The position numbers were made by a program, and so were the translations under genes. From Kudoa neothunni (lineage: Eukaryota; Animalia; Cnidaria), in NCBI GenBank assembly GCA_964304625.1, contig OZ199839.1:3462724-3526723 (forward strand): 64,000 nt of DNA. Direction: 5' to 3'. Every line of letters starts with the position of its first letter. Within the stretch, counting starts at the first letter, position 1. This document shows positions 7,583 to 58,170 of this stretch, in pieces. A model generated the notes under the pieces. It was not told where the DNA came from and did not search any database. It saw only the letters and a list, made by a program, of their open reading frames with translations.

Positions 7583-10336
7583 CCTTCTATCCATTTAGGG
7601 GTGTTGTGTCACCCCCTAAATCGACTTTAATCTGCTCATAACTACTTACACTTCGCACTAAATAATTTGAAATTATACCTATTCTCATAATTTAATAAGT
7701 TACATAAGTTGAGGAAAGCTTAAGAAAAAATTATGAGGTTAAGCATAAAAGAAAAGACTTTCTTCTAATGTAGTGACATTGGGGTGTATTTCACCCCGAA
7801 TTTTTTTGGAATAAATTTAGTTAAAATATTATTATAAAACGTTTGTTAAAATTATGTTTTATTCTAATGAGAGATTTTGGAGGAAAATCTCAACAATATC
7901 GTAGATTAATCCTTAATAATCTTATTCGGACGACATTATCATTTCATTGGATATTTTCGTTATTTACATGGTGTGTGATTCCTTTTACTTCTCACATAAA
8001 TTTATCTATATTTATCAAATGTTATTTGATATATTTTAAATTTGAATATCGAATCTTTTATAAAATTTTACGAAATTATTTAAAACACGAGGGACGATGT
8101 ATTCTCACAGGTTATAGGGGCGAACATTTAACTCTTAGAATATCCTATTTTATCAGATTTAAACAATAATTGTTAAGATTCTTAAGTATTTTAGTTAGTA
8201 AATTAAAATGCGGCAGATAACCTAACAAATAGCATCTTTAAACGCACGCGGTTGACCTCTTTTAAAAAGTAAATATGAACAGTGATTTTCCGGAATTTAT
8301 TGACGAGCTCGAATCATATGGTAGTGAAGTCGAAGACTGCTTGCTTGAGTTTCTAGAATCATCTGACGAATGCTATGAAATCGAATGTAATCAAGACTCT
8401 GCTGAGGCAAAAAGTGGGATTGTTTGGAGCCTAATCAAGCCGCCTGTTTCAAAAACATCAATTGAAAACATAATGAATTGTAATCCAGGGTCAACAGTTA
8501 CTGTATTCAACGCATCAAAGAAGTTTTTGATATTATTTAATGAAAGTATTTGTGGAGAAATTATTAAAAACACCAACATGTTTGGACTTGATTATTTCCA
8601 CGATACATGGAAAGAAGTTGATGATGTAGAATTAAAGGGTTTCTGGGAATCCTTATCTTAATGGGAATTCATCAAGAGAGAGCCGAACCTTTGCATGAAC
8701 TTTTTTGTTTATCCAAAGGGAAGCAAATTTATCGTCAGCTTTTTGCTCGAACTCGTTTTTTTACAAATATGGGGGGCACTACATTTTGACATTATAGGCA
8801 CAAGAATGTAAAGAAGTGCTGATAAATTTGCTGCAATTCGACGTGTTTGGAACATGTGGGTAAACGAAATACCCATGTACTTTGCTCCTCATGAAGACAT
8901 CACAATTGACGAACAACTTTTCATTTTTAAAGGAAGATGCCCCTTTAGGCAATATATGCCTAAAAACTGGCGAAATATGTCCTCAATATTTCTCCTTATC
9001 TCGGGAAAAATGGCGAAAGCGCTACTAGAAGTGTTGGAGTTGGCGAAAGCATTGTTCTTACATTTGCATCTCCATTGTACAATTCTGGGAGGAACAGTGT
9101 TGCGTATAATTTTTTTTCGTCGCTATCACTGGCATCAAAGTTGCTGCAAAAACGCCTTACTTATCTTGGAACTATAAGGAATAATAAGAGGGATTTTCCT
9201 CCATGTGTGTTTCCATCAAGGAACAGGGCGTTGCATAGCACCATATTTCTCTTCCATGAGAAAAACATGATAACGTCATATGTTACCAAGAAAGGAAAGG
9301 CCGTTAATTTGATATCGACAGGAACGAATAACACCAACATAGGAAATCTACAAAATGACAGTAAACCACACGTTATAGAGCACTACAATAGCACTAAAGG
9401 TGGGGTCGATACTGTCGACAGGATGATATCTTCAGTATCCGTTCGTAGGTTCTGCAGAAGATGACCAGTCGTTGTATTTTATAGTATGATTGACATATCA
9501 TTAATCAACGCCTTCTGCATCTATAAAAACATTTTTAAGGAAAATCCCCCCAAAAGAAGAGTTTTTTTAAAGAAATGGCAGAATTATTGTACAGGTAACT
9601 TCTTAGTAGAAATACTAAAATTGAAAAAGTAGTCAAAAGGTGTAGTGACCTCTATATAATAATATAATAACTTGAATATTATGATCGGCCGTCGCCACGG
9701 GAGGGGTATTATTAGTTAGCGAATTGCGGTTTTATCGCGTGCCGCTGCTTCATTACAAAAGGACTCTTACATCCAACAAAAATAAACATAATGTTCCTTC
9801 GAAATCGCAATCTAGATACCAATTATGTCCTCGAAGAAACGATAAAAAACGACCTTATGTTGCGAAATCTGGCAACGATATTATTGCAAAGATCACTCAT
9901 CAAAAATCTGTTTGGATTTCTCAAAATAAATAATTAATTTTATTATATATTATTTTTCATTTAGTCGTCTATTTATTTTTACCAAAAATACACATTTCAT
10001 TCGCTGGTCGCATTTATATAAGTTTTTTAACAGCGCGCGAAATCATCCGATAGGATTAAAGTGGGCTTAATGGTGTCAATATTCTGTATTTTCCTGGAAA
10101 TCTGTTCGTATGAATTTTTTAAAACTCTATATATTACTTTATATTAATTTTACAAATAAAATGATCAAAAAATTCGGGGTTAAATCTACCCTAATATCGT
10201 TAGAGGTATTGTGGGGATTCTTACAGATTTACGCTCTAATGAAGACACTTATAATTGTAACTGTCGAACATTTTATATGATAAATTATTAATAGTCGTAA
10301 TATATTATAATTCCCTTAATAGTATATAAATGGAGG
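7583..10336 (+). mobile_element. piggyBac transposon, decayed (right end approximate)
   Basis: TTAA|CCTTCTATCCATTTAGGGGTG at left; AAATGGAGG|TTAA at 10328-10340; subterminal GGGGT-N-ACCCC motifs at 7598, 7781 and 10175; transposase inside. Confidence 0.75.
8275..9930 (+). pseudogene. piggyBac transposase, frameshifted
   Basis: Motifs ITIDEQLFIFKGRCPFRQYMPK, LTYLGTIRNNKR and KPHVIEHYNSTKGGVDTVDRM, plus a C-terminal LCPRRNDKK Cys-rich remnant, split over several frames with stops. Confidence 0.92.
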
Positions 10337-14954: not shown

Positions 14955-16168
14955 ATGAGAAAATTTTCTTTGGATCAAAAAATAATAAAAATCACTTCGG
15001 CTGTCCTTTTCTATTGGTGATACGACAAACAAATTTGTGCTAATACAGTTGTGTTGTATAGGCTGGTTTCAATATGTATGGTTTTTCTCAGCAAAACACT
15101 TCTAGCATACGGCGATGTGAGCATATTTAATTCGAAAACTGAAATAGACATGAGCTAATCTAGTTAAATGTTCCAATCTCGATGACCATTTCTCAATTCA
15201 CCATATCAACTGTTTTGATAATTTTTGCGTATTACTGTGTGAATCAAAGGAGAGACGAAAGTTACGTTAAGGGCGGTAGCGGCAGAAATACCTCATTGGT
15301 CTTACAATTCAAAGATGTATTTTGGGGGAATTTACACCCTAAAATGCCCTCTGCGTGTCCAAATTTAATAGTAGTTGATTTTAGACCCTTTTTCTGGCTT
15401 TCCTACTGTCAGGAATGATTGCGTTCAACAACTTGGCGCTATACTTTATATCAATTTCGTTTTATAATGTGGCCAGATCAATGAATACTGTGTTCAATGT
15501 GGTAGGAATAATAAATAAAATAGAATGTTTTATAGTGTGATCTTTGTTGGTAGATTTTTACCAAACTAATCCTCAAAGACGAAATCTCGTTGAAAGTGTT
15601 GGGCTGCTGTTTGATTATCTTTTGTGGGTTTATGATGGGTTGTGCTGATTGTTATGTGAGCGATACCACAGAAATATACATCACCAGTAAAAGCATAATG
15701 TTAAAAGGCATTGTGTTTGGTGTGCTGGGATCACTATTCAACAGTCTCTATAGTGTGATATCGAAACAAATGCTCCAAAAATATACCAACCTTCAAGTGA
15801 TGCTCACACTTAATCCAACTGCACTCGTTCTTATAACTCCGCTAATTTTTATAAATAACGAAGTGGATCTGCTGAGAGCCACCGAAAAACATGTGTGGCT
15901 TTCACCTTGTTTGTATACGTTGATTGTGTTGAGTGGTATCTGTGGTATGATGGTGACATACGCTTCACTACTCCAAATTGAGGTCACTTCGCCACTCACA
16001 CACAATGTCAGTTCCACTTCAAAGTCGTATGTTCTTACTATCATTGCAGTGCTTGTCCACAAAGAGTTCAATCATACCACCTACTTCTGGCTAAGTAATG
16101 CGTTGGTATTGAGTGGATCACTACTGTATGCGAGTGTGAGGCATTCTGAATTGAAAAATAGCATGTAG
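14955..16168 (+). CDS. SLC35C1: GDP-fucose transporter 1 (SLC35 nucleotide-sugar transporter), 5 exons
   Basis: Spliced product contains AVLFYWLVSICMVFLSK, MIAFNNLALYFISISFYNVARSMNTVFNV and LQIEVTSPLTHNVSSTSK, matching SLC35C1 signature segments. Confidence 0.9.
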
Positions 16169-40400: not shown

Positions 40401-41860
40401 CACTGCAACACAATTTTACCCCGGATTCGATTAGTTTCCAACAATAATGCTGCAAATAGTGTAAGGTTTCACACCATGCCATAGGATGGAAATAGAAGTT
40501 CATTAGATAACGCTCGGCCACATAAACAACTATCGATTCGAATCCGAATCCAAATCAATCAAATTGAGCACACCAATTAACTTACTTCGTTTCACCAACA
40601 ACACTACATCTTCCACACCAAGAGGGTTATTCTTTTCCCAGATAATCCATTGAATCCACAGTGATTTCTACAGAGCACAATTATTTTAGTTATAATCGAG
40701 GCCACAGAAAGCTAAACATACTTGTTTCTGCTCGCTAGGAGTATTTTTGGGAGGGGTTGGAATGGTATTTCGTAGCAGACCTTTATTCATCGAAGAACAG
40801 TCCTAAATAATCATTATTTTGCATTTAACATGTGTAATATGTGATACCTTAGCAACTCTCTTGCTATTGGAGAAATCTTTGATTTTTTCACCGAGCACCT
40901 TGTCACTATTGAGGCGAGATACACACTGTTCAAAAGCGCTATACTCTTTCCAAAGAGCATCCAAATTGATCATTGGAATTTGAAGAGCTTCCTTTTAATA
41001 GTTTAATTTTATTTTTAAAAATCCACTCGACTAATATAAATCTAGCTTACATGATACAATTCGCGCAACTCTTTCACATTTAATATTTCGTTAAACGAGC
41101 CCTGATCAACGCTATATAAAATCACGCAATGTTTCATATTCCAATCATATTTGTATGCAGTTAAAAATACTTTGATTTCAAATGATTAATATAATCACAC
41201 CACAACTATACAACAGTTTATTATAGAATTTTTATGAATATTTTAAGCATTACTTTACATGCGTTGTAATCCAGCCCAGTTAACATTATTACTGTTTGGT
41301 AGCCTCTTTTGATGTGATCACTACAATCAAACGCGACCAATCAAATTTTATTAATACTGAAAAAATTACAAATAATCTTGCGATCCATTAAACTTTCTTT
41401 TCAAATAACTCATATACAATTCACACAATTCGACATCCCTTATAGTATTCATATATTGTTGGAATAACTATACGAAACATTAGTTTATGATGGTTTTTAT
41501 TTGCATAATTAAAAAATCCACTACGTTCTCAAGGTGTTCGGAGTAGGTTTCACTGTTCATTTCTTTTTTCACATAGATCTTAAGAAATGTGGCGCATGTT
41601 GGGAATTGTTTCATTGCTCTCTCGAAAAATGGTCTCGATTCTTCGATCGGTCTCATCTTGATGATCACATTAGCAAATGTAAATCTACAGTATGATACTT
41701 CCGCTTCTTTCACCAACAGTATCCAACAACTAACTTCAAAAGGATCCACATTGTTGATACATTCCTCGGCTATTCTGCCTTTTTCGGTATTACTCCAATA
41801 GGGGTTTAATGTGTTCAATGTATTTGGTGTATGAACATCTTTTCGATTCATATCTTCCAT
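34487..41860 (-). CDS. CSTF3: Cleavage stimulation factor 77 kDa subunit (CstF-77/Suf/Rna14), multi-exon, with a 4.2-kb intron (35624-39801)
   Basis: N-terminal DPFEVSCWILLVKEAE-MRPIEESRPFFERAMKQFP; LWCDYINHLK; ALK|RFGKNQQFIESFLFHL..NIRLIFERIL; PDLSQMRPF; HVVPGGLF..LLSLLPP; C-terminal SDVYQARLNKKLAQ*. All colinear with CstF-77. Confidence 0.92.
35815..35890. repeat. Compound (TAAC/TAAT/AAAC)n tetranucleotide microsatellite in the CSTF3 long intron
   Basis: ctaaactaaccaacttaattaattaattaattaattaactgactgattaactaacaaacaaac. Confidence 0.7.
36541..39110 (-). mobile_element. piggyBac (internally deleted) inside the CSTF3 intron, with a hAT nested in one TIR
   Basis: TTAA|CC[CTCTAAGG..hAT..CTCTACGG]ACTTTGGGGTCTTTTGGACCCC ... 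GGGGTCTCTTGTACCCCCAAAGTCCTTGGAGGG-spacer-CCTTAGAAGGGG|TTAA; minus-strand KSGIMWSFSKPIISR is homologous to the transposase N-terminus at 8410. Confidence 0.85.
36551..38048. mobile_element. hAT (Buster-type) non-autonomous element
   Basis: Perfect 17-bp TIR CAGGGGTTCTCAACCGG / CCGGTTGAGAACCCCTG; 8-bp TSD CTCTAAGG/CTCTACGG. Confidence 0.9.
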
Positions 41861-44100: not shown

Positions 44101-46722
44101 ATGAAAAAGTATTATTTTCTTAACAAATAGTAAATTAAGCTAATCATTTGAATTAGAGCATGGTGTTATAACAGTGCTTCCCAGAGAGTAAGGGGAAGAA
44201 TGTAAATTAATGGTTTGATGGCGACAAAATTTAATTAAAATTGAGGATAATTTTTGAAAATAAATTATCAATTTTTTTATATATTAATCGTAAAAATATA
44301 ATGAATTCATTGTTATTTTTCTTAGTGTAATCAGTTTCAATTTTTTGCTTTTAATATAATGCCCAAATATCGTAAGAGGCGCGTTTAATTAAAAAAAATT
44401 AATGAATGAAACATTTGGATTAATTATCTTCGAAATGAGCCTTACTATTAATACATTGAAAGGTAAAATATAATATTTATTTCTTGACAAACAATAAGAT
44501 ATTAAATTATATTGTAAAGATAAAATGAAATTATTTTTAGTTAATTTTTGAAACCAATTCTATATTAAACATAAGGCTGATCAATCCCACAATTTTAAGT
44601 GAGTTACGCCTTATCGTACATAGAATGGGTGCCGATTTATGTTTTTCATGAAAAGAAGGTGCAAATTCGATTTGAGCTGGAAGGCGCTGCGTTAGGATAT
44701 CCAGAAGGTCTATTATGACCTGTTTCGTACAATTCACATTAACGATTATTTTTTCGTAATTGCAAACAATAAATTTAAGATAAGAAATTATTTGATGATG
44801 AACAAGAAATTAATATAAGCAATAATTTTTTCGCAATGTGTTTAAATCTATCATTAGATTTTATATGGTAACGAGAGGGCACAATCACTTACTCAAGTCT
44901 CAAGTTGGTCACCGTGTTTGTTTTTTGTTGGCTCAATATAGGGTACTAATTTTACAAATGCGCAGTAAATTTGTGGTCGCAATTTTAAAATGAAACACAG
45001 ATGCCGAAACTATATAAACATTTGCTCCATGATTAGCTATCTTTCGTTCAACGTTCATTTCCACGCAAGTTTTCCATTGAGTATTCCCACTCCTTGCAGT
45101 CTTCTCATCGTTGCCTTATTCAAGCAAACATTAAAAAATTTTAATTAATTGCTAATAAACTGCAAAATGGATATAAATTTGAAGAATATATTTATATCTA
45201 ATATAAAAATTCCATTTTGGGTCGGGAATTGGGCATATTCTGCATTTTAAATTCTACTAAGCAAAATATTTTTATCCATTTAAGAATAGATTAAATTATA
45301 AATTTGTCATAATTTCAAGAATGAGTATGACCAGTGAAAATTAAAAGTATTTTGGGGAATCATAAAAAATAATGAAAACTTGCGACAATTAATTTTTATC
45401 ATTCGGATTAATCCACATTGAACTGAAATGACAATTATTGAGTTCATGTCAATTAACAAATGCGGATACGAATATTCGATATCGAGTAATGATATAGTTG
45501 AATTAATAAAAAATTTTAATACATAAGGGAATGTTAATTAAACTGGTCATTACTCTGAAATTTGTGAACGTTAATCTTATAATGAAGTCGTGTAATCTAA
45601 TTTGAAATCTATAAAACCACAATTTTTAAATGATGTGATAACTTTTAATTTCTTTAATAATATCTAAAATTTTAAAATTCACACTAAAGTCTTTCCATCA
45701 GGAGTAAATTATTTCATACCTGCATACATAGACACACAAAGGATTATGTATACATTAGAATATACATAGATGTTCGTTATTTGTTTAAAGGCATCATTAT
45801 TTTATTTTTGAATTATATTTTGACAACTTTTTTTATTTGTTGTTAAGTATTTCCAGCATAATTCCTGTTTTTAAAATATTTAATATTCTAATGAAAATAT
45901 TTTGTTTGTTGAACAATTACGTTTAATATAGTTTACTTGTTAAATTTATTATTCTGCTTCTATGCTCACCCTAAGTTAGGCCTTTCAATTTTCGAACTTA
46001 CCAACACTATATTTCAAGATTAAGCCATAAAATTTTCTTTCAAAAATCTCCACAAATACCTTGTACTTTCTTTTTAGGTAAAAGAGAATGGTAGAGTCAT
46101 TAAAGGTCGCGGAAAAATGGTAAGTTCTCCTCTTTTATATCATTCTGTATGTTTTTAGGATTACAAACCTGAAGATAAACAAATCCAAATCAAACATAAA
46201 CTGGCCTCATCAAAAAGTAAAAGAGGTCATTCTTCTGGTAGTCCTCGAGAAGATTCAAGACGGAAAGAGACTCTATCACCTAATAGTCCCCCAAAAAATT
46301 CAAAGCGAAAAAAATCCCCATCTCCTGATAGACCTAAAAAAGCTATTGAGCATCAATCGCCGTCCTCTGACAGTTCTAGAAGATATGTGAGACGTCGAAG
46401 ATCGTCCTCCTCTACCAGTCCACAAAAATATCGGAGGCACCAAAGTTCTCCATCTTCGCATAGTTCACAGAAAGATTCAAAACAAAAAAGATCTACAAAC
46501 GATTATCGAAGAACCTCAAAACGCCCCAGATCTCTATCTTCTTCTTCGTCGGATAACCGTCGAAAACGTCTGAGATCTTTGTCGTCGGATGATGAAAGAA
46601 GACGTTCAGCCTATCCTAAAGTAACTTGAAAACATTTCGCACGTTTCGTCATTAAAATTTTTTTATTTTAGTCAAAGCACAAAAGATCTTCTACGGGCAG
46701 CTCTATCAGTTCCAGTAGATAG
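41988..46722 (+). CDS. PPIG: Cyclophilin with Moca motif and RS-rich C-terminus (PPIG/NKTR family); 2.9-kb intron at ~43215-46077
   Basis: [75 protein letters not shown]; acidic linker, [18 protein letters not shown], then an Arg/Ser-rich tail. Confidence 0.9.
45700..45770 (-). mobile_element. Helitron 5' terminus in the PPIG long intron (3' end not located)
   Basis: Minus strand A|TCTATGTATATTCTAATGTATACATAATCCTTTGTGTGTCTATG matches the other Helitron 5' ends. Confidence 0.5.
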
Positions 46723-46877: not shown

Positions 46878-49416
46878 CTATCTGCAGCATTTTTTAGGAC
46901 AGCCTGCAATACATGACTTTCTAAATTGTTAATAAAATTATAAATAAAATCATCTCAAGAATAACGATTAGATTGTTACTTGCAATGCATGTAATAGGGG
47001 GCGCAGCCAGCAGGCATTCCTTGTATTCCAGACATGTGTGATGCTGCCGAATTGCATGTTCCCATTAAAGCTGCACAGTCACTAGCAGATATATTAGGTA
47101 CTGCATTTTGTTGTTGAAGGCAGTTCTTAAACTAAATTAGTTATGCAATGGTTCTAATTATTTTTACAGAATTTTGGCAGTTGCAATATGGAGTAAGGCG
47201 GAACAATCCTGTTGTGCGGTTGGACTCATATTACCCTGAACTTGGGGTCCCTATCAAATATATTTAAATTAAATCATCTAAATTGAATTTCGCACTTGAA
47301 TTAATGGGTAACACTGTGACATCAAGGCTATGCATTGATCAATGTTTGCTGAAGCGGCATTTCCACCAGTAGAGCCACCTCCGAATTGCCCTGGCATACA
47401 GTTGGACAGGTAGGATTGACATTGTGGCTGAGAGAGTTGGGGAACACACGATGTCGAACCACTATCTGATCCACTATTTGGGAAACAATTGCCGAGAAGA
47501 CTTGCACATTGTTGGGCTATTTGTTGGTTGCCCTAGTGGTCAAAAATTTCGATTGGTTAATTTTTCCCCTATAGAAAACTACCGCGTTGGATGGCATACT
47601 ACGGCAATAACCCATCAAATTTTGACAGTTTACCATTGTTGATGGGCTCTACATGTAACTCAATAATAAAACTTGTTCAGCAACTACCATTGATGAACTG
47701 CAGGAAGAATCCATATAATCAAGACAACCACCAAGCATTGAGCTCAATTGGGTTTGTGATTGCGGGGGAGTCCACGTATCGTCACCCATAAAATTCTTTA
47801 ATACCGTCATATGTGACAGAATATTTGGAAAATAATACGTAATTTTGGCCTGACTGACATCCAAACAGAATAGGTGAACAAGATTGTGCCATAGGCATCG
47901 TTCCAGCTGCACAGTCGCTACTATAGGCTTGAGGAGCACATTGACCCATGAGAGATGTACATTGTTGCATGTAATTTTGGTTCATCTGGAATAGAGAAAA
48001 TTGTAATTAAACTGTAATTGAAACTAAAAATAATTATCATACGACATTGGTTGCGGCTTGTTGACACAAACCCAACAGGTTGTTGCACATACTGGGAGGT
48101 GTCATTGGATTCATCTATTAAAAAAGTGTTTAGTTCAACTCCCACTTTGCGAAATAATTACTGGAACTTGGGATTGGCCACCCCCACAAGAAGAAATCAT
48201 GTCCATACAATTTGAGAAATGAGAGTTAACATTGGGAATACATGACAAACCACAGTTCTAAAATAAAATTAATGATTTTTTTCATCCCTCGATAGTACTC
48301 CGCTCTGAGGCATTGGATTGTATGGAGGATTACATTGAGACATCATTTGGTTACATTGTGCCATGTTTCCTAACATAAAATGAGTTTTATTTGATCATAA
48401 TCATACCTCCCATCATATTTTGTTGGTTCTGTTGTGAATTCATCATATTATTAGATTGCATAGGATGATTCATCTGCATTTGTTGATTTGGATGCATCTG
48501 TTGATTAGGATGCATCTGTTGGTTTGGATGCATTTGCTGATTAGGATGCATCTGTTGATTTGGCTGCATCTGTTGATTTGGCTGCATTTGCTGATTAGGC
48601 TGATTGTGAAGTGTTTGAGATGGTGCTTGTTGGTTATTAGTGGGTTGGGGTGATTGCGGATTTTGTTGAGGAGGTTGATTAGGAACGTCTAAGCTTTTTG
48701 GTTTGGGTTTCCATTCTTCAATTATTTCACTATTTTTTTCTTCTGGTTCCTATGATAGCGTGAATTAATCTGTTGTTAACACAGCATTACTATGACTGGT
48801 TCCTCATCATTATCAATATTGGAGTCTAAAAATTTTAATTAAAACCAGAACACTCAACAATTAAGATACCATAATATTTGATGCTCGGCTGTTTTTTGTG
48901 GACCTTTTCCTTTATTTTTTTAACTTTATGTTTACGATTTACCTCTAAAATGTCAAAAAAACCAATTTACCATAATAAATAACAACATCTACTACTCATA
49001 CTTTTATTTTTATGTGTGCTATCAACTTTTGTGTGACTTTTCTCTATAATTTTATAGATCGGAAAGGTAAGTCAACATTAAGAAACTTACTTGATGCGGA
49101 GTCATTTTTAATCAGAGAAACTCTATGATGAGCTGATTTTTCATCCTTGTCTTCAAGTAATATAATTTTTTTGTTTTTCAGTGTGAGAGCTTTGGTTTTG
49201 TTCTTATTTTCATTCTCTAAATTTGATACTAGTGATAAGAAACAATATATTTTAACATTAACAACCAACCTTTTTTTACATCTTTTTCATGGTTTTTACT
49301 TTCTAAATCAAATATTCATTTTTAGCGCCTTAATCAAATTTCAGAATACCGTCTGCTATCAGCACATCTGTTGCAACCAAAAATAATACTAACAAAATCT
49401 TACTATATTTCTTCAT
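46878..49416 (-). CDS. Orphan secreted protein: signal peptide, Lys/His-rich region, Gln/Pro/Met repeat, ~12 CX6C modules and a C-terminal minicollagen-type CRD; candidate nematocyst/polar-capsule protein (about 17 exons, one apparent -1 frameshift at ~47190)
   Basis: MKKYSKILLVLFLVATDVLIA signal; (M[Q/H]PNQQ)x6; QCNQMMSQC, NCMDMISSC, MCNNLLGLC, QCTSLMGQC, SCSPILFGC, NCQNLMGYC, QCASLLGNC, QCQSYLSNC, QCIALMSQC, DCAALMGTC; ends GCAPYYMHCKKSCIAGCPKKCCR*. All introns are GT-AG. Confidence 0.85.
48480..48602 (-). repeat. 18-bp coding tandem repeat encoding M(Q/H)PNQQ
   Basis: Six full units plus a leading QPNQQ; the units differ mainly at synonymous positions. Confidence 0.9.
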
Positions 49417-56408: not shown

Positions 56409-58170
56409 ATGAAAAGATCTTCCGCTAGGTGATTTAAATATTTTTTGTATATTTATAACGATGTTTTAGTTTTTCTCGTAGTAATATACATGGAAAAGTA
56501 AACACAATAACTTTGTCTTTTCAAAATAAATATGTATCTATGTTTCTAGTTGTCTAAGATAACCGGTTTGTGTCCGGAGATGAGCTTATTCAATGTCCTC
56601 TACTCGAAAGAGCAAGCCATTGATAATGTATTAACTAGAAAGGCTTGTATCTATAAACGTGAACTCGGAAACAGAGGATTCGAATTGAATTTAATGAGAA
56701 TTCAGGTGATATCCACTTTTGGTTACGAACCACCCATTCCTGATAATACTTCTGTAAATGAAAATTTGGATGCAACAGCTGATAGAAATTATAACCTAAA
56801 TCAATCTTCTGAATTGCCTCAATGGAACACTGCTTCCGAGTCTCCAAATACATGGTATCTAACCATTCGAAGTAAATGGAGTTGAATAAAAAACCAACAG
56901 AGAACCTAACCAATCTGATATGTAGATTTTTTGTTGGATCCCATCTCTCATAATGACATAAAAGCGTTTGGGTCAATTCAACCTGATCAAACAGGTAAAA
57001 TTTAAGTATCCACTCAGGTGCGCCCTTCTGACAACCAAATATAGATACCAATTGTTCGGAAGAAACATCTCTCAGGGATATGTTCAGTTCAATCTATATA
57101 TTTAGAGATGAAGAACAAACTATACTAAAATCCACCATGTATGTGAAAGACAAGAACAACCAATCTCCACCAATAATATCATCCAATGCTACCTACTCTC
57201 CAGAGGGAGGATTCCGCGTTAAATTCCCCCTCAATAGCGAACAACCCACCCTAAGATATAAAATTGTTTGCAGTTTGAACCAATTCACTACTCAATATAA
57301 ACTTAATTCTGAGTTGGCAACAGTTATCGGTTGTAATGGTGGATCTTTTCCACGTATACTTTGCTCCTTATACAATTACATCCATTGCAATAATCTACTG
57401 TCTGAAAATGATATGTGTTTGGTGATGTGCGATGATAAACTGAAAAGGGTTGGTTTCTCTTGATGGCTACCAAACAACAATTTCAATTGCCAATTGTTTG
57501 TAGGTGTTTGCGACAGATCAATTTTATTTGAAAGATGTCGTGGTTATGTTACCAAAATTTTTCGAAAGACCCGATCCTATCATTATCAAAAATGTGTTGG
57601 CCAACCCTGCTTTTTTCCCAGCCAATACTAACAATCAATCCAACACAGGCGACAATCAATTCAATAGACCCCCTTATTTTCATGAGGAGTTCGTGCCCGT
57701 TGAAGTAACCGATTGGGTAGGTTGATACTGTTCTGATCTATGTCTAAGGTGCCCACATGCTACAATCATTACTTGAAACGAATTGTTGATGTTTTCGGAC
57801 CAAGACTCACTATTGATGATGCAATTTCTTCATTTAAATCTGATTCAGCCCAGGAGAACCAAAACAAAATAACCGCTAACGATGAGGACAATAGTAGAAT
57901 GATCACGCTCCACGAAGAAATCAATCATCTAATCAATGAATGTGTAGAAATCAGCGGCAAAATAGAGCATCTTAATAGATTTGTTAAAAACCCTCGGATA
58001 CAATTAATTGACAACTTTAAAGTGAGTTTATTTTCTCCAAAATAATTTGTTCTTATTTCATGATTAAGATATGTGAATATGAGTCAGATAAGACTTTATC
58101 GTCAAATTTCACCCTTGACAACACCACTCGCCTACTCATGGATAGTATCGTTAAGAGTGGTCAGACATAA
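56409..58170 (+). CDS. SMARCD: SWI/SNF subunit BAF60 (SMARCD1/2/3 family, SWIB domain), multi-exon
   Basis: PEMSLFNVLYSKEQAIDNVLTRK, MRIQVISTF, WYLTI, GFRVK, QYKLNSELATVIG..PRILCSLYNYIHCNNLL..VMCDDKLKR|VF..PDPIII, followed by a C-terminal coiled coil. Confidence 0.85.

What the first reader, a model, noticed from the sequence alone, without database searches (positions are those of the whole stretch)
46878..49416. Orphan modular secreted protein ending in a nematocyst-type CRD: candidate new polar-capsule structural/elastomer protein
Seen: manual splicing gives signal peptide, then a Lys/His-rich basic region, an acidic linker, a Gln/Pro/Met low-complexity repeat, about 12 C-x-x-Φ-Φ-x-x-C modules (Φ = L/M/I/Y) separated by Gly/Ser/Gln/Met/Pro linkers, and finally C-X6-C-X3-C-X3-C-X3-CC-R*. 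Known: CX3CX3CX3CX3CC domains cross-link minicollagens, NOWA and the Gln/Met-rich elastomer Cnidoin in cnidarian capsules. There are no Gly-X-Y triplets, so this is not a minicollagen. Inference: it is a capsule-network protein whose i/i+7 Cys helical modules form a repeat type I do not recognise, with the last module fused into a variant CRD. It could contribute to the elastic polar tubule or capsule wall. The ORF track shows only fragments, so automated annotation could easily miss it.
Basis: partly seen in the sequence, partly recalled or inferred. Interest (0 to 1): 0.85.

Follow-up and report, generated by a model that had tools for sequence, protein, structure and literature searches.

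The report
Orphan secreted cysteine-repeat protein of Kudoa
A previously unrecognisable 17-exon gene of a fish-muscle parasite (most likely Kudoa neothunni) encodes a secreted, glutamine/methionine/cysteine-rich repeat protein with no detectable relatives. Its last few residues copy the cysteine spacing that cross-links stinging-capsule proteins, so it is a plausible but untested building block of the parasite's polar capsules.

Summary
On the minus strand, 49416 to 46878, 14 consecutive exons joined by GT-AG introns of 37-57 nt give an open 510-aa frame. It reads signal peptide, Lys/His-rich basic part, acidic linker, Q/N/P/M hexapeptide repeat, then Cys modules. Three more exons end in C-x6-C-x3-C-x3-C-x3-CC-R-stop. 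C-x6-C occurs 11 times (shuffles: mean 1.55, maximum 6). Exon GC is 39.9% and intron GC 25.2%.

Other canonical splice paths reach the tail in frame but fit base composition less well.

The genome fits the published Kudoa neothunni assembly. No exon matches Pfam or the PDB. Exon 14 has no relative among 1.84 billion proteins, and exons 11 and 14 have no paralogue in the genome.

It is not a minicollagen: no Gly-X-Y, no polyproline, no N-terminal CRD. It resembles Cnidoin in layout and composition only.

The capsule role is an inference from the tail.

The scan had noted other collagen-less CRD proteins in this genome, but not this module.

Verdict: a real orphan gene and a new variant of CRD-bearing structural proteins. 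Its function is unproven.

The parts
49350..49416 (-). Exon 1: start codon and signal-peptide-like N-terminus (MKKYSK + ILLVLFLVA + TDVLIAD)
   Evidence: read directly from the sequence. No signal-peptide predictor was available.
49270..49302 (-). Exon 2 (33 nt, phase 1-1): start of the Lys/His-rich basic region
49091..49228 (-). Exon 3 (138 nt, phase 1-1): basic region
   Evidence: no Pfam match above threshold
49002..49043 (-). Exon 4 (42 nt): basic region
48870..48944 (-). Exon 5 (75 nt): basic region. Residues 23-117 have net charge +18 and 7 His.
48791..48825 (-). Exon 6 (35 nt): start of the acidic linker (DSNIDNDEEPVI)
48407..48749 (-). Exon 7 (343 nt): end of the acidic linker, then the Q/N/P/M low-complexity region with QQM(H/Q)PN copies (18-nt tandem repeat, 6.8 copies, 48475-48596)
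   Evidence: no Pfam match; no hit in the word-index search
48299..48369 (-). Exon 8: module CNQMMSQC
48162..48257 (-). Exon 9 (phase 0-0): C-x3-C, then module CMDMISSC
48043..48114 (-). Exon 10 (phase 0-0): module CNNLLGLC
47839..47985 (-). Exon 11 (phase 0-0): modules CTSLMGQC and CSPILFGC
   Evidence: single copy in the genome; model pLDDT 53, short helices
47688..47795 (-). Exon 12 (phase 0-0): degenerate module (first Cys replaced: LSSMLGGC) followed by C-x7-C
47583..47648 (-). Exon 13 (phase 0-0): module CQNLMGYC
47296..47532 (-). Exon 14 (79 aa, phase 0-0): modules CASLLGNC, CQSYLSNC and CIALMSQC, with Gly/Ser linkers
47168..47250 (-). Exon 15 (83 nt): enters as GPQVQGNMSPTAQQDCSALL and leaves as YCNCQNS in another frame. 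This is a 1-nt frame break inside a would-be module. Alternative in-frame splice paths exist.
46980..47125 (-). Exon 16 (an acceptor at 47131 is also possible): modules CAALMGTC and CAPYYMHC. The second supplies the first two Cys of the tail. The donor overlaps an in-frame stop (AAG|TAA).
46878..46920 (-). Exon 17: (K)KSCIAGCPKKCCR-stop. Joined to exon 16 it gives C-x6-C-x3-C-x3-C-x3-CC.
   Evidence: GC 39.5% against 18.6% and 24.5% in the flanks; the pattern occurs only twice in six frames of the 64-kb window

Best explanation
This is a genuine, lineage-restricted gene of a Kudoa parasite. It encodes a protein of about 600 aa that enters the secretory pathway.

Layout: a long charged N-terminal part (basic, then acidic; possibly a propeptide) is followed by a Gln/Asn/Pro/Met-rich disordered repeat. 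Then come about a dozen short hydrophobic Cys-x6-Cys modules strung on flexible Gly/Ser/Gln/Met/Pro linkers. Most modules sit on their own phase-0 exon, which suggests growth by exon duplication. The protein ends in a six-Cys tail whose last five Cys sit in the minicollagen/NOWA CRD register.

Most likely function: a disulfide-cross-linked structural protein laid down in the post-Golgi vesicle that becomes the polar capsule. The tail would tie it into the minicollagen network. The Cys modules would act as extra cross-link points. The disordered Q/M-rich stretches would give compliance. That makes it a functional counterpart of Hydra Cnidoin, not a homologue. Isopeptide cross-linking of the Lys-rich and Gln-rich parts by transglutaminase may add to this.

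Shown: the gene structure, the motif statistics, orphan status as far as the exon-wise searches reach, and the cysteine register of the tail.

Inferred: secretion, translation of the tail, every cross-linking step, and the capsule location.
For: Gene is real:
- 13 canonical introns of 37-57 nt keep a 510-aa frame open.
- Exon GC is 39.9% and intron GC 25.2%. The Kudoa neothunni annotation reports 36.8% and 26.0%, with a median intron of 49 bp (PMC12239612).
- 14 of 16 donors are GTA, as described for myxozoans (PMC13644364).

Organism:
- 40.26 Mb in 4 contigs, and window GC of 30.2%.
- (TAAACC)n occurs only at one chromosome end, as published.

Modules:
- 11 C-x6-C against a shuffle mean of 1.55 and a maximum of 6, with a shared consensus.

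Tail:
- The cysteine register was read.
- The last exon is exon-like in GC between AT-rich flanks.
- The tail pattern has only one other hit in six frames of the 64-kb window.
- Several canonical paths reach it in frame.

Capsule context:
- Real CRD proteins exist in the same genome. One of them picks NOWA and minicollagen CRDs as its top PDB hits.
- Cnidoin has a signal peptide, a 90-aa propeptide, a Gln/Gly/Met/Cys-rich repeat and CRDs (PMC4321713). This protein's part after residue 150 (exons 7-14) has Q 17.5%, M 10%, C 6.7%.
- A survey of the Hydra nematocyst proteome against K. iwatai reported only NSP1-7, and neither Cnidoin nor the word 'elastic' occurs in that paper.
- The genome holds at least 11 transglutaminase-core matches. 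Transglutaminase was found in Ceratonova shasta polar capsules (PMC5566210).
Against: - No expression or proteomic evidence.
- No homologue anywhere, so the function rests on a 23-residue tail and on composition.
- The tail departs from the canonical CRD: its first spacing is 6, not 3, and it is Lys-rich rather than Pro-rich. It depends on an unverified last splice; without it the protein ends ...YYMHCK*.
- Exon 15 is out of frame in the assembly.
- There is no N-terminal CRD, no polyproline and no Lys-Arg end to the putative propeptide.
- The structure models are low-confidence.
- Spore valves or other secreted matrices could equally use such a protein.
Confidence: 0.42

Rival explanations
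1. It is a secreted, cross-linked structural or surface protein of the spore, but not of the polar capsule. Candidates are shell-valve or suture material, the spore coat, or a plasmodium surface or matrix protein. In this reading the terminal Cys cluster is just more of the Cys-rich sequence. Like loricrin or SPRR proteins of the cornified envelope, it would be hardened by disulfides and by Gln-Lys isopeptide bonds.
For: - Signal peptide, a Lys-rich part and a Gln-rich part, then a Ser/Gly/Cys-rich body.
- Many transglutaminase-core loci in the genome.
- The tail is not a canonical CRD and lacks the Pro-rich character of the real CRDs of this genome.
- No other capsule gene lies in the 64-kb window.
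Against: - The last five Cys are exactly in the CRD register, at the very C-terminus followed by a basic residue. The genome's own CRDs show the same C-x3-CC ending.
- That register is otherwise almost absent from the window.
- No valve protein with such a tail is known, but none has been characterised either.
Confidence: 0.28
2. The 3' end is damaged. The 1-nt frame break in exon 15 is real rather than an assembly error, so the gene is decaying or makes a truncated product. That product would end soon after ...DCSALLHIATAKIL and would lack the last modules and the CRD-like tail. It could keep the tail only through a minor splice path.
For: - Exon 15 is 83 nt and changes frame inside a module.
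- The published assembly QV is 48.5, so an error in any given 83 nt is unlikely a priori.
- Base composition favours the whole exon 15 plus a 42-nt intron over the in-frame alternatives.
Against: - The downstream exons 16 and 17 still read as perfect modules and tail with no stop, and with exon-like GC. Any damage would therefore have to be very recent.
- HiFi k-mer coverage was only about 7.
- Three canonical GT-AG paths restore the frame without changing the DNA.
- Kudoa is diploid in fish, so the other allele may be intact.
Confidence: 0.2
3. It is not a gene. The low-complexity, Cys-containing frames and GT-AG pairs line up by chance in AT-rich DNA.
For: No homologue, no RNA evidence, and low-complexity sequence.
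Against: - 13 successive canonical introns in the narrow 37-57 nt range keep 510 codons open.
- There is a 15-point GC contrast between exons and introns.
- C-x6-C is about 7-fold enriched, beyond all 2000 shuffles.
- The frame starts with a signal-peptide-like segment.
Confidence: 0.04

Closest known systems
Cnidoin (Hydra nematocyst elastomer; PMC4321713)
   Same: Signal peptide; unusually long charged pre-region; long repetitive, disordered body rich in Gln, Met, Cys, Gly and Pro; Cys spaced regularly inside the repeats; a C-terminal short Cys cluster in the CRD register; no collagen triplets.
   Different: - The repeat motif differs: Q-C-x-x-L-M-G-x-C here, QMQGCGQQxP there.
- Met is about 8-10% here, against 17% in Cnidoin.
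- There is no N-terminal CRD and no Lys-Arg end of the pre-region.
- The first Cys spacing of the tail is 6, not 3.
- No sequence similarity was detectable. The exhaustive search with exon 14 found no cnidarian protein.
Minicollagen / NOWA cysteine-rich domain (CRD: C-x3-C-x3-C-x3-C-x3-CC; PDB 1ZPX, 2HM3)
   Same: Six Cys in about 22 residues at the C-terminus. The last five are in the canonical register and end in C-P-x-x-CC followed by a basic residue.
   Different: - The first spacing is 6 residues, and that pair doubles as the last C-x6-C module.
- The loops are Lys-rich rather than Pro/Gly-rich.
- The domain is split by an intron.
- It was not tested by sequence or fold because the joined tail has no reference.
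[quoted passage not shown]
   Same: Myxozoan capsule proteins that keep six Cys but change one spacing, and that carry Gly/Ser-rich instead of Pro-rich flanks.
   Different: In those proteins the widened spacing lies between Cys 2 and Cys 3 (9-10 residues). They also have Gly-X-Y collagen cores and a canonical N-terminal CRD, both of which are absent here.
Collagen-less CRD/proline-rich capsule proteins (Hydra CPP-1; the CRD genes of this genome in L003 and L006)
   Same: Secreted, collagen-free, low-complexity proteins with CRD-type Cys clusters. The L003 gene also has Met/Pro/Gln-rich stretches.
   Different: They have several near-canonical CRDs and polyproline. This protein has neither, and has the C-x6-C module instead. 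Exons 11 and 14 matched no other locus of the genome.
Loricrin/SPRR and tropoelastin (analogy only)
   Same: Alternation of short cross-linking elements with flexible low-complexity stretches, one element per in-phase exon. Lys-rich and Gln-rich ends would suit transglutaminase.
   Different: No sequence relationship and a different cross-link chemistry. The analogy comes from general knowledge and was not tested here.

Membership tests
Minicollagen | Central Gly-X-Y collagen triplets (about 4-24 repeats) | tested here: not met
   No run of 3 or more G-x-x in exons 1-14, and none of 5 or more in any frame of the window.
Minicollagen | Polyproline stretches flanking the collagen core | tested here: not met
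   No PPP in exons 1-14.
Minicollagen | N-terminal CRD C-x3-C-x3-C-x3-C-x3-CC | tested here: not met
   The only early Cys cluster is C-x3-C-x10-C-x6-C in exon 9.
Minicollagen / NOWA CRD | Six Cys in the register C-x3-C-x3-C-x3-C-x3-CC | tested here: inconclusive
   The tail reads C-x6-C-x3-C-x3-C-x3-CC, so five of six Cys are in register. It depends on an unverified 59-nt intron.
Minicollagen / NOWA CRD | Sequence or fold similarity to solved CRDs (1ZPX, 1SP7, 2HM3) | not testable with these tools
   An intron splits the tail into 9 + 14 residues, and joined sequences were not to be searched. Exon 16 alone finds nothing. A canonical CRD of the same genome does find 2HM3 and 1ZPX first.
Cnidoin | Signal peptide plus long propeptide ending in Lys-Arg | tested here: inconclusive
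   The signal-peptide-like start and a charged region of about 130 aa are present. There is no KR or RR; the only match in the dibasic scan is at residue 97, Arg-Lys.
Cnidoin | Repetitive Gly/Gln-rich elastic domain with the motif QMQGCGQQxP and very high Met | tested here: not met
   The motif is different, Q-C-x-x-[LM]-[LM]-[GS]-x-C. The composition is similar in kind: Q 11.5%, C 10.1%, G 9.3%, M 7.9% in the module region.
Cnidoin | CRDs at both ends | tested here: not met
   Only a C-terminal variant is present.
Cnidoin | Detectable sequence homology | tested here: not met
   phmmer of exon 14 against 1.84 billion representatives gave one spurious hit only. The word search found none. Direct alignment to Hydra Cnidoin was not run because no referenced sequence was available.
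NOWA | SCP/CAP and C-type lectin domains followed by 8 CRDs | tested here: not met
   No Pfam domain in any exon scanned.
Nematocyst / polar-capsule structural proteins (functional class) | Expression in capsulogenic cells and presence in the disulfide-linked insoluble capsule fraction | not testable with these tools
No Kudoa capsule proteome was found in the library.

The most novel reading that the evidence does not exclude
The protein is the myxozoan polar capsule's own elastomer or cross-linker. It would be a new protein family, built by exon duplication of a previously undescribed Cys-x6-Cys cross-linking module and welded to a variant CRD. In the polar tubule or capsule wall it would do the job that Cnidoin does in Hydra nematocysts. 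It would thus be an independently evolved solution to energy storage and recoil in a stinging organelle.
Probability: 0.3. Interest if true: 0.75.

Novelty: new variant of a known kind. Interest (0 to 1): 0.52.

Why it matters
Polar capsules are what myxozoan parasites use to attach to their fish hosts. Beyond minicollagens, nematogalectins and a handful of NSP proteins, their material basis is unknown. In particular, no counterpart of the nematocyst elastomer has been reported in Myxozoa, even though the polar tubule visibly contracts after firing.

A collagen-free, Gln/Met/Cys-rich repeat protein ending in a CRD-type cluster is the kind of molecule one would look for. If it is confirmed, three things follow:
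- It would add a new cross-linking module to the small set of capsule building blocks.
- It would show how fast such proteins turn over in sequence while keeping their layout.
- It would offer a parasite-specific spore antigen for Kudoa, a genus of economic and food-safety concern.

It also illustrates that hint-based annotation of these genomes probably misses orphan multi-exon genes.

Tried and rejected
- Pfam on 11 exons: nothing above threshold. The only hits were chance-level: Paramecium_SA at E 0.1, MSG at 0.46, DcpS_C at 0.028.
- Exhaustive phmmer with exon 14: one hit, P0001. It is an unrelated 818-aa repeat protein that shares only the SQLLGLCFPNA string seven times, so I rejected it.
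- Word-index searches with exons 14 and 7: nothing.
- ESM Atlas by features: no usable hit.
- PDB by sequence with exon 16: chance hits only.
- Paralogues in the genome, searched with exons 11 and 14: only the locus itself.
- Genome-wide DNA pattern for C-x3-C-x3-CC: swamped by TGY-type simple repeats (367 hits against 141 for the control), so uninformative.
- AlphaFold2 on exons 14 and 11 without an alignment: pLDDT 53.5 and 53.2. Short helices overlap most of the C-x6-C modules, but the confidence is too low to support or reject the helical reading or to justify a fold search.
- A 26-nt micro-intron and a 71-nt intron as in-frame rescues of exon 15: both are possible on paper. I consider them unlikely because the removed DNA is exon-like in GC, measured at 46% for the 26-nt candidate. 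Kudoa introns are also not ultra-short (PMC13644364).
- Minicollagen, NOWA and Cnidoin membership: rejected; see the membership table.
- Left out on instruction: no search, fold or comparison was run on the joined (spliced) protein or on the joined CRD tail. Exons were joined only inside scripts, to read frames and count motifs.
Full report
**1. What is in the sequence**

The feature lies on the minus strand. From the ATG at 49416 I could chain 14 exons through 13 canonical GT-AG introns of 37-57 nt into one open frame of 510 codons. The frame reads as follows.

- A signal-peptide-like start: MKKYSK, a nine-residue hydrophobic core, then TDVLIAD.
- A Lys/His-rich basic stretch. Residues 23-117 have net charge +18 and 7 His.
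- An acidic stretch. Residues 118-150 have net charge -7.
- A Gln/Asn/Pro/Met region (Q 33%, N 19%, P 16%, M 14%). It contains QQM(H/Q)PN copies encoded by an 18-nt tandem repeat of 6.8 copies at 48475-48596.
- From residue 244 on, a Ser/Gln/Gly/Asn/Cys/Met/Pro-rich body with regularly spaced Cys.

Several things argue that this is a gene and not chance.

- Exons have 39.9% GC and introns 25.2%.
- 14 of 16 donors begin GTA.
- From exon 9 on, every exon with an unambiguous frame (9-14) is phase 0-0, and most exons carry one module.

**2. The module**

C-x6-C occurs 11 times in the pieces after residue 244. Residue shuffles give a mean of 1.55 and a maximum of 6 in 2000. No other spacing is comparably enriched.

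Anchored on the first Cys, the consensus is Q(-1)-C-x-x-[L/M/I/Y]-[L/M/I/Y]-[G/S]-x-C-x-P. A twelfth copy is split by the frame break described below. A thirteenth, in exon 12, has lost its first Cys.

Single-sequence AlphaFold2 models of exons 14 and 11 place short helices over most of the modules. Their mean pLDDT is only 53.5 and 53.2. An intra-module disulfide loop is equally possible.

**3. The 3' end**

After exon 14 the best acceptor (tatttgatag|, 45-nt intron) opens exon 15 at 47250. The best donor closes it at 47168 (|gtaaaa), followed by a 42-nt intron.

This exon is 83 nt. It enters reading ...QQDCSALL and has to leave reading YCNCQNS in another frame. It is therefore one base short of an open frame, inside what looks like a normal module.

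I enumerated all GT-AG paths. Three routes reach the same C-terminus in frame without changing the DNA:
- an 86-nt intron, 47167-47082;
- a 71-nt intron 14 ending at 47225;
- a 26-nt micro-intron, 47234-47209.

Base composition argues against them. Exon 15 has 47.0% GC. The 42-nt intron has 21.4%. The stretch 47125-47082 has 36.4%, and the 26-nt candidate has 46.2%. Kudoids also do not have ultra-short introns (PMC13644364).

My reading is that the exon is real and the base count is wrong or polymorphic. HiFi k-mer coverage was about 7 in the published assembly. However, the published QV of 48.5 keeps a real, recent frameshift alive as a rival.

Exon 16 (47125-46980) carries two more modules. 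Its donor overlaps an in-frame stop (AAG|TAA). Without the last splice the protein ends ...YYMHCK.

With a 59-nt intron (46979-46921), exon 17 adds KSCIAGCPKKCCR-stop. The end then reads C-x6-C-x3-C-x3-C-x3-CC-R. Two observations support this exon.
- Its GC is 39.5%, between 18.6% in the intron and 24.5% downstream.
- C-x3-C-x3-CC occurs only twice in all six frames of the 64-kb window.

**4. Whose genome**

G000 has 40.26 Mb in 4 contigs. The window has 30.2% GC.

The Kudoa neothunni assembly of Weber, Paulini and Blaxter has three chromosome scaffolds plus a circular mitochondrial genome. It has 30.41% GC, a median intron of 49 bp, and a (TAAACC)n telomere at a single chromosome end (PMC12239612). 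I found (TAAACC)5 only at the end of contig C2, with 85 overlapping hits and 0 in the control.

The identification is an inference, but a strong one. That annotation used protein hints only, because almost no parasite RNA was available. An orphan 17-exon gene could therefore well be missing from it.

**5. Relatives**

- No Pfam family matched any of 11 exons.
- There was no PDB sequence match for exon 16.
- Exons 11 and 14 have no paralogue in G000.
- phmmer of the 79-aa exon 14 against 1.84 billion representatives returned a single protein. It shares one short string repeated seven times and is unrelated.
- Word-index searches with exons 14 and 7 returned nothing.
- The Atlas search returned nothing.

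There are caveats. The queries are short and of biased composition. Kudoa proteins evolve fast. Other Kudoa genomes may not be in these libraries. 'Orphan' here means 'no relative detectable', not 'none exists'.

No search, fold or comparison was run on the joined protein or the joined tail.

**6. Comparison with what is known**

It is not a minicollagen. It has no Gly-X-Y, no polyproline and no N-terminal CRD.

The genome does hold true CRD proteins.
- L006 encodes CAVGCPNVCSPRCEPSCC after an RFRRQ pro-site. Its top PDB hits are the NOWA CRD 2HM3 and the minicollagen CRD 1ZPX.
- L003 encodes a collagen-less gene with three CRD-like clusters, polyproline and Met/Pro/Gln-rich stretches.

Against these, our tail shares the register of the last five Cys and the C-P-x-x-CC ending. 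It has a 6-residue first loop and Lys-rich loops. [quoted passage not shown]

The closest known protein in layout is Hydra Cnidoin. It has a signal peptide, a 90-aa propeptide and a QMQGCGQQxP repeat with 17% Met and many Cys. It has CRDs at both ends, is insoluble without reduction, and oligomerises through disulfides (PMC4321713).

Our protein shares the layout and the kind of composition. It does not share the motif, the N-terminal CRD, the Lys-Arg site or any detectable similarity. It therefore works, at most, like Cnidoin and is not a member of that family.

A survey of the Hydra nematocyst proteome against K. iwatai found only NSP1-7 besides minicollagens and nematogalectins, and does not mention Cnidoin. 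Orphan Cys-rich proteins were seen in the Ceratonova shasta capsule proteome (PMC5566210).

**7. Mechanism proposed**

All of the following is inferred. The protein is co-translationally secreted. It may be trimmed of its charged N-terminal part and delivered to the capsule primordium.

There the C-terminal six-Cys cluster would exchange disulfides with the CRDs of minicollagens and other capsule proteins. The dozen C-x6-C modules are short hydrophobic elements capped by Cys. They would provide further intra- or inter-chain disulfide nodes. The Gly/Ser/Gln/Met/Pro linkers and the Q/N/P/M repeat would stay disordered and give extensibility.

The juxtaposition of a 25% Lys part and a 33% Gln part also fits transglutaminase cross-linking. 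So do at least 11 transglutaminase-core loci in this small genome and the presence of that enzyme in C. shasta capsules.

**8. Verdict**

| Claim | Probability |
|---|---|
| It is a real gene | about 0.9 |
| The CRD-like tail is part of the product | about 0.65 |
| It has a polar-capsule structural role | about 0.4 |

The main rival for function is another cross-linked spore structure. The main rival for the gene's integrity is a recent 3' frameshift.

It is a new variant of the known class of CRD-bearing, collagen-free capsule proteins, and it contains a module that has no family. Interest is moderate. It would be high if transcript and proteomic data confirmed the tail and the location.

Noticed in passing
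G000:C2:12039536-12040069 (outside the window): (TAAACC)n tandem array at the very end of contig C2 and nowhere else in the genome (85 overlapping hits, control 0). This matches the single telomere reported for the Kudoa neothunni assembly and so identifies the genome.
   Followed up: yes
L003 (G000:C2:4339900-4341300), minus strand, about 428-1029: Collagen-less secreted gene with three CRD-like clusters (CSPDCAPQCNPACC; CPPQCPPQCC after polyPro; CPRMCMNQCAQCNQSCC), a PPPPPPP run and a Met/Pro/Gln-rich stretch (MPMQPMSMPMPQMPP). It shares the compositional flavour of the finding but not its module.
   Followed up: partly
L006 (G000:C2:7041595-7044651), plus strand, about 850-1250: Gene fragment with a canonical CRD (CAVGCPNVCSPRCEPSCC) right after an RFRRQ pro-site. 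It also has a Pro/Ala-rich spacer and a second, variant CRD (CGPTCNPACISTGCSSSCC). Its top PDB hits are NOWA 2HM3 and minicollagen 1ZPX.
   Followed up: partly
G000:C2:5684756-5715547 and G000:C1:2022675-2113951: At least 11 matches to the transglutaminase core (PF01841), in two clusters. That is many for a genome of about 5,300 genes. It could reflect heavy use of isopeptide cross-linking, or protease-like relatives of the fold.
   Followed up: no
window 46387-46629 (+): Arg/Ser-rich open frame (RS-domain-like, ...[17 protein letters not shown]...) converging on the 3' end of the finding. The two genes' ends lie only about 150-250 nt apart.
   Followed up: no
window 9075-9464 (+): Fragment of a piggyBac-type transposase (DDE_Tnp_1_7, E 5e-16), i.e. 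transposon debris in the window.
   Followed up: no
window 15590-16168 (+), 41480-41860 (-), 57080-57463 (+): Ordinary eukaryotic housekeeping exons: a triose-phosphate/nucleotide-sugar transporter family exon, HAT-repeat (Suf/PRP39-like) and SWIB/MDM2 domain. None is capsule-related.
   Followed up: no
window 47125-47082 and 47167 (-): If the assembly is read literally through exon 15 and its 42-nt intron, the frame runs into ...KMQYLIYLLVTVQL-stop, a short hydrophobic C-terminus. It is probably meaningless, but it is what a truncated product would carry.
   Followed up: partly
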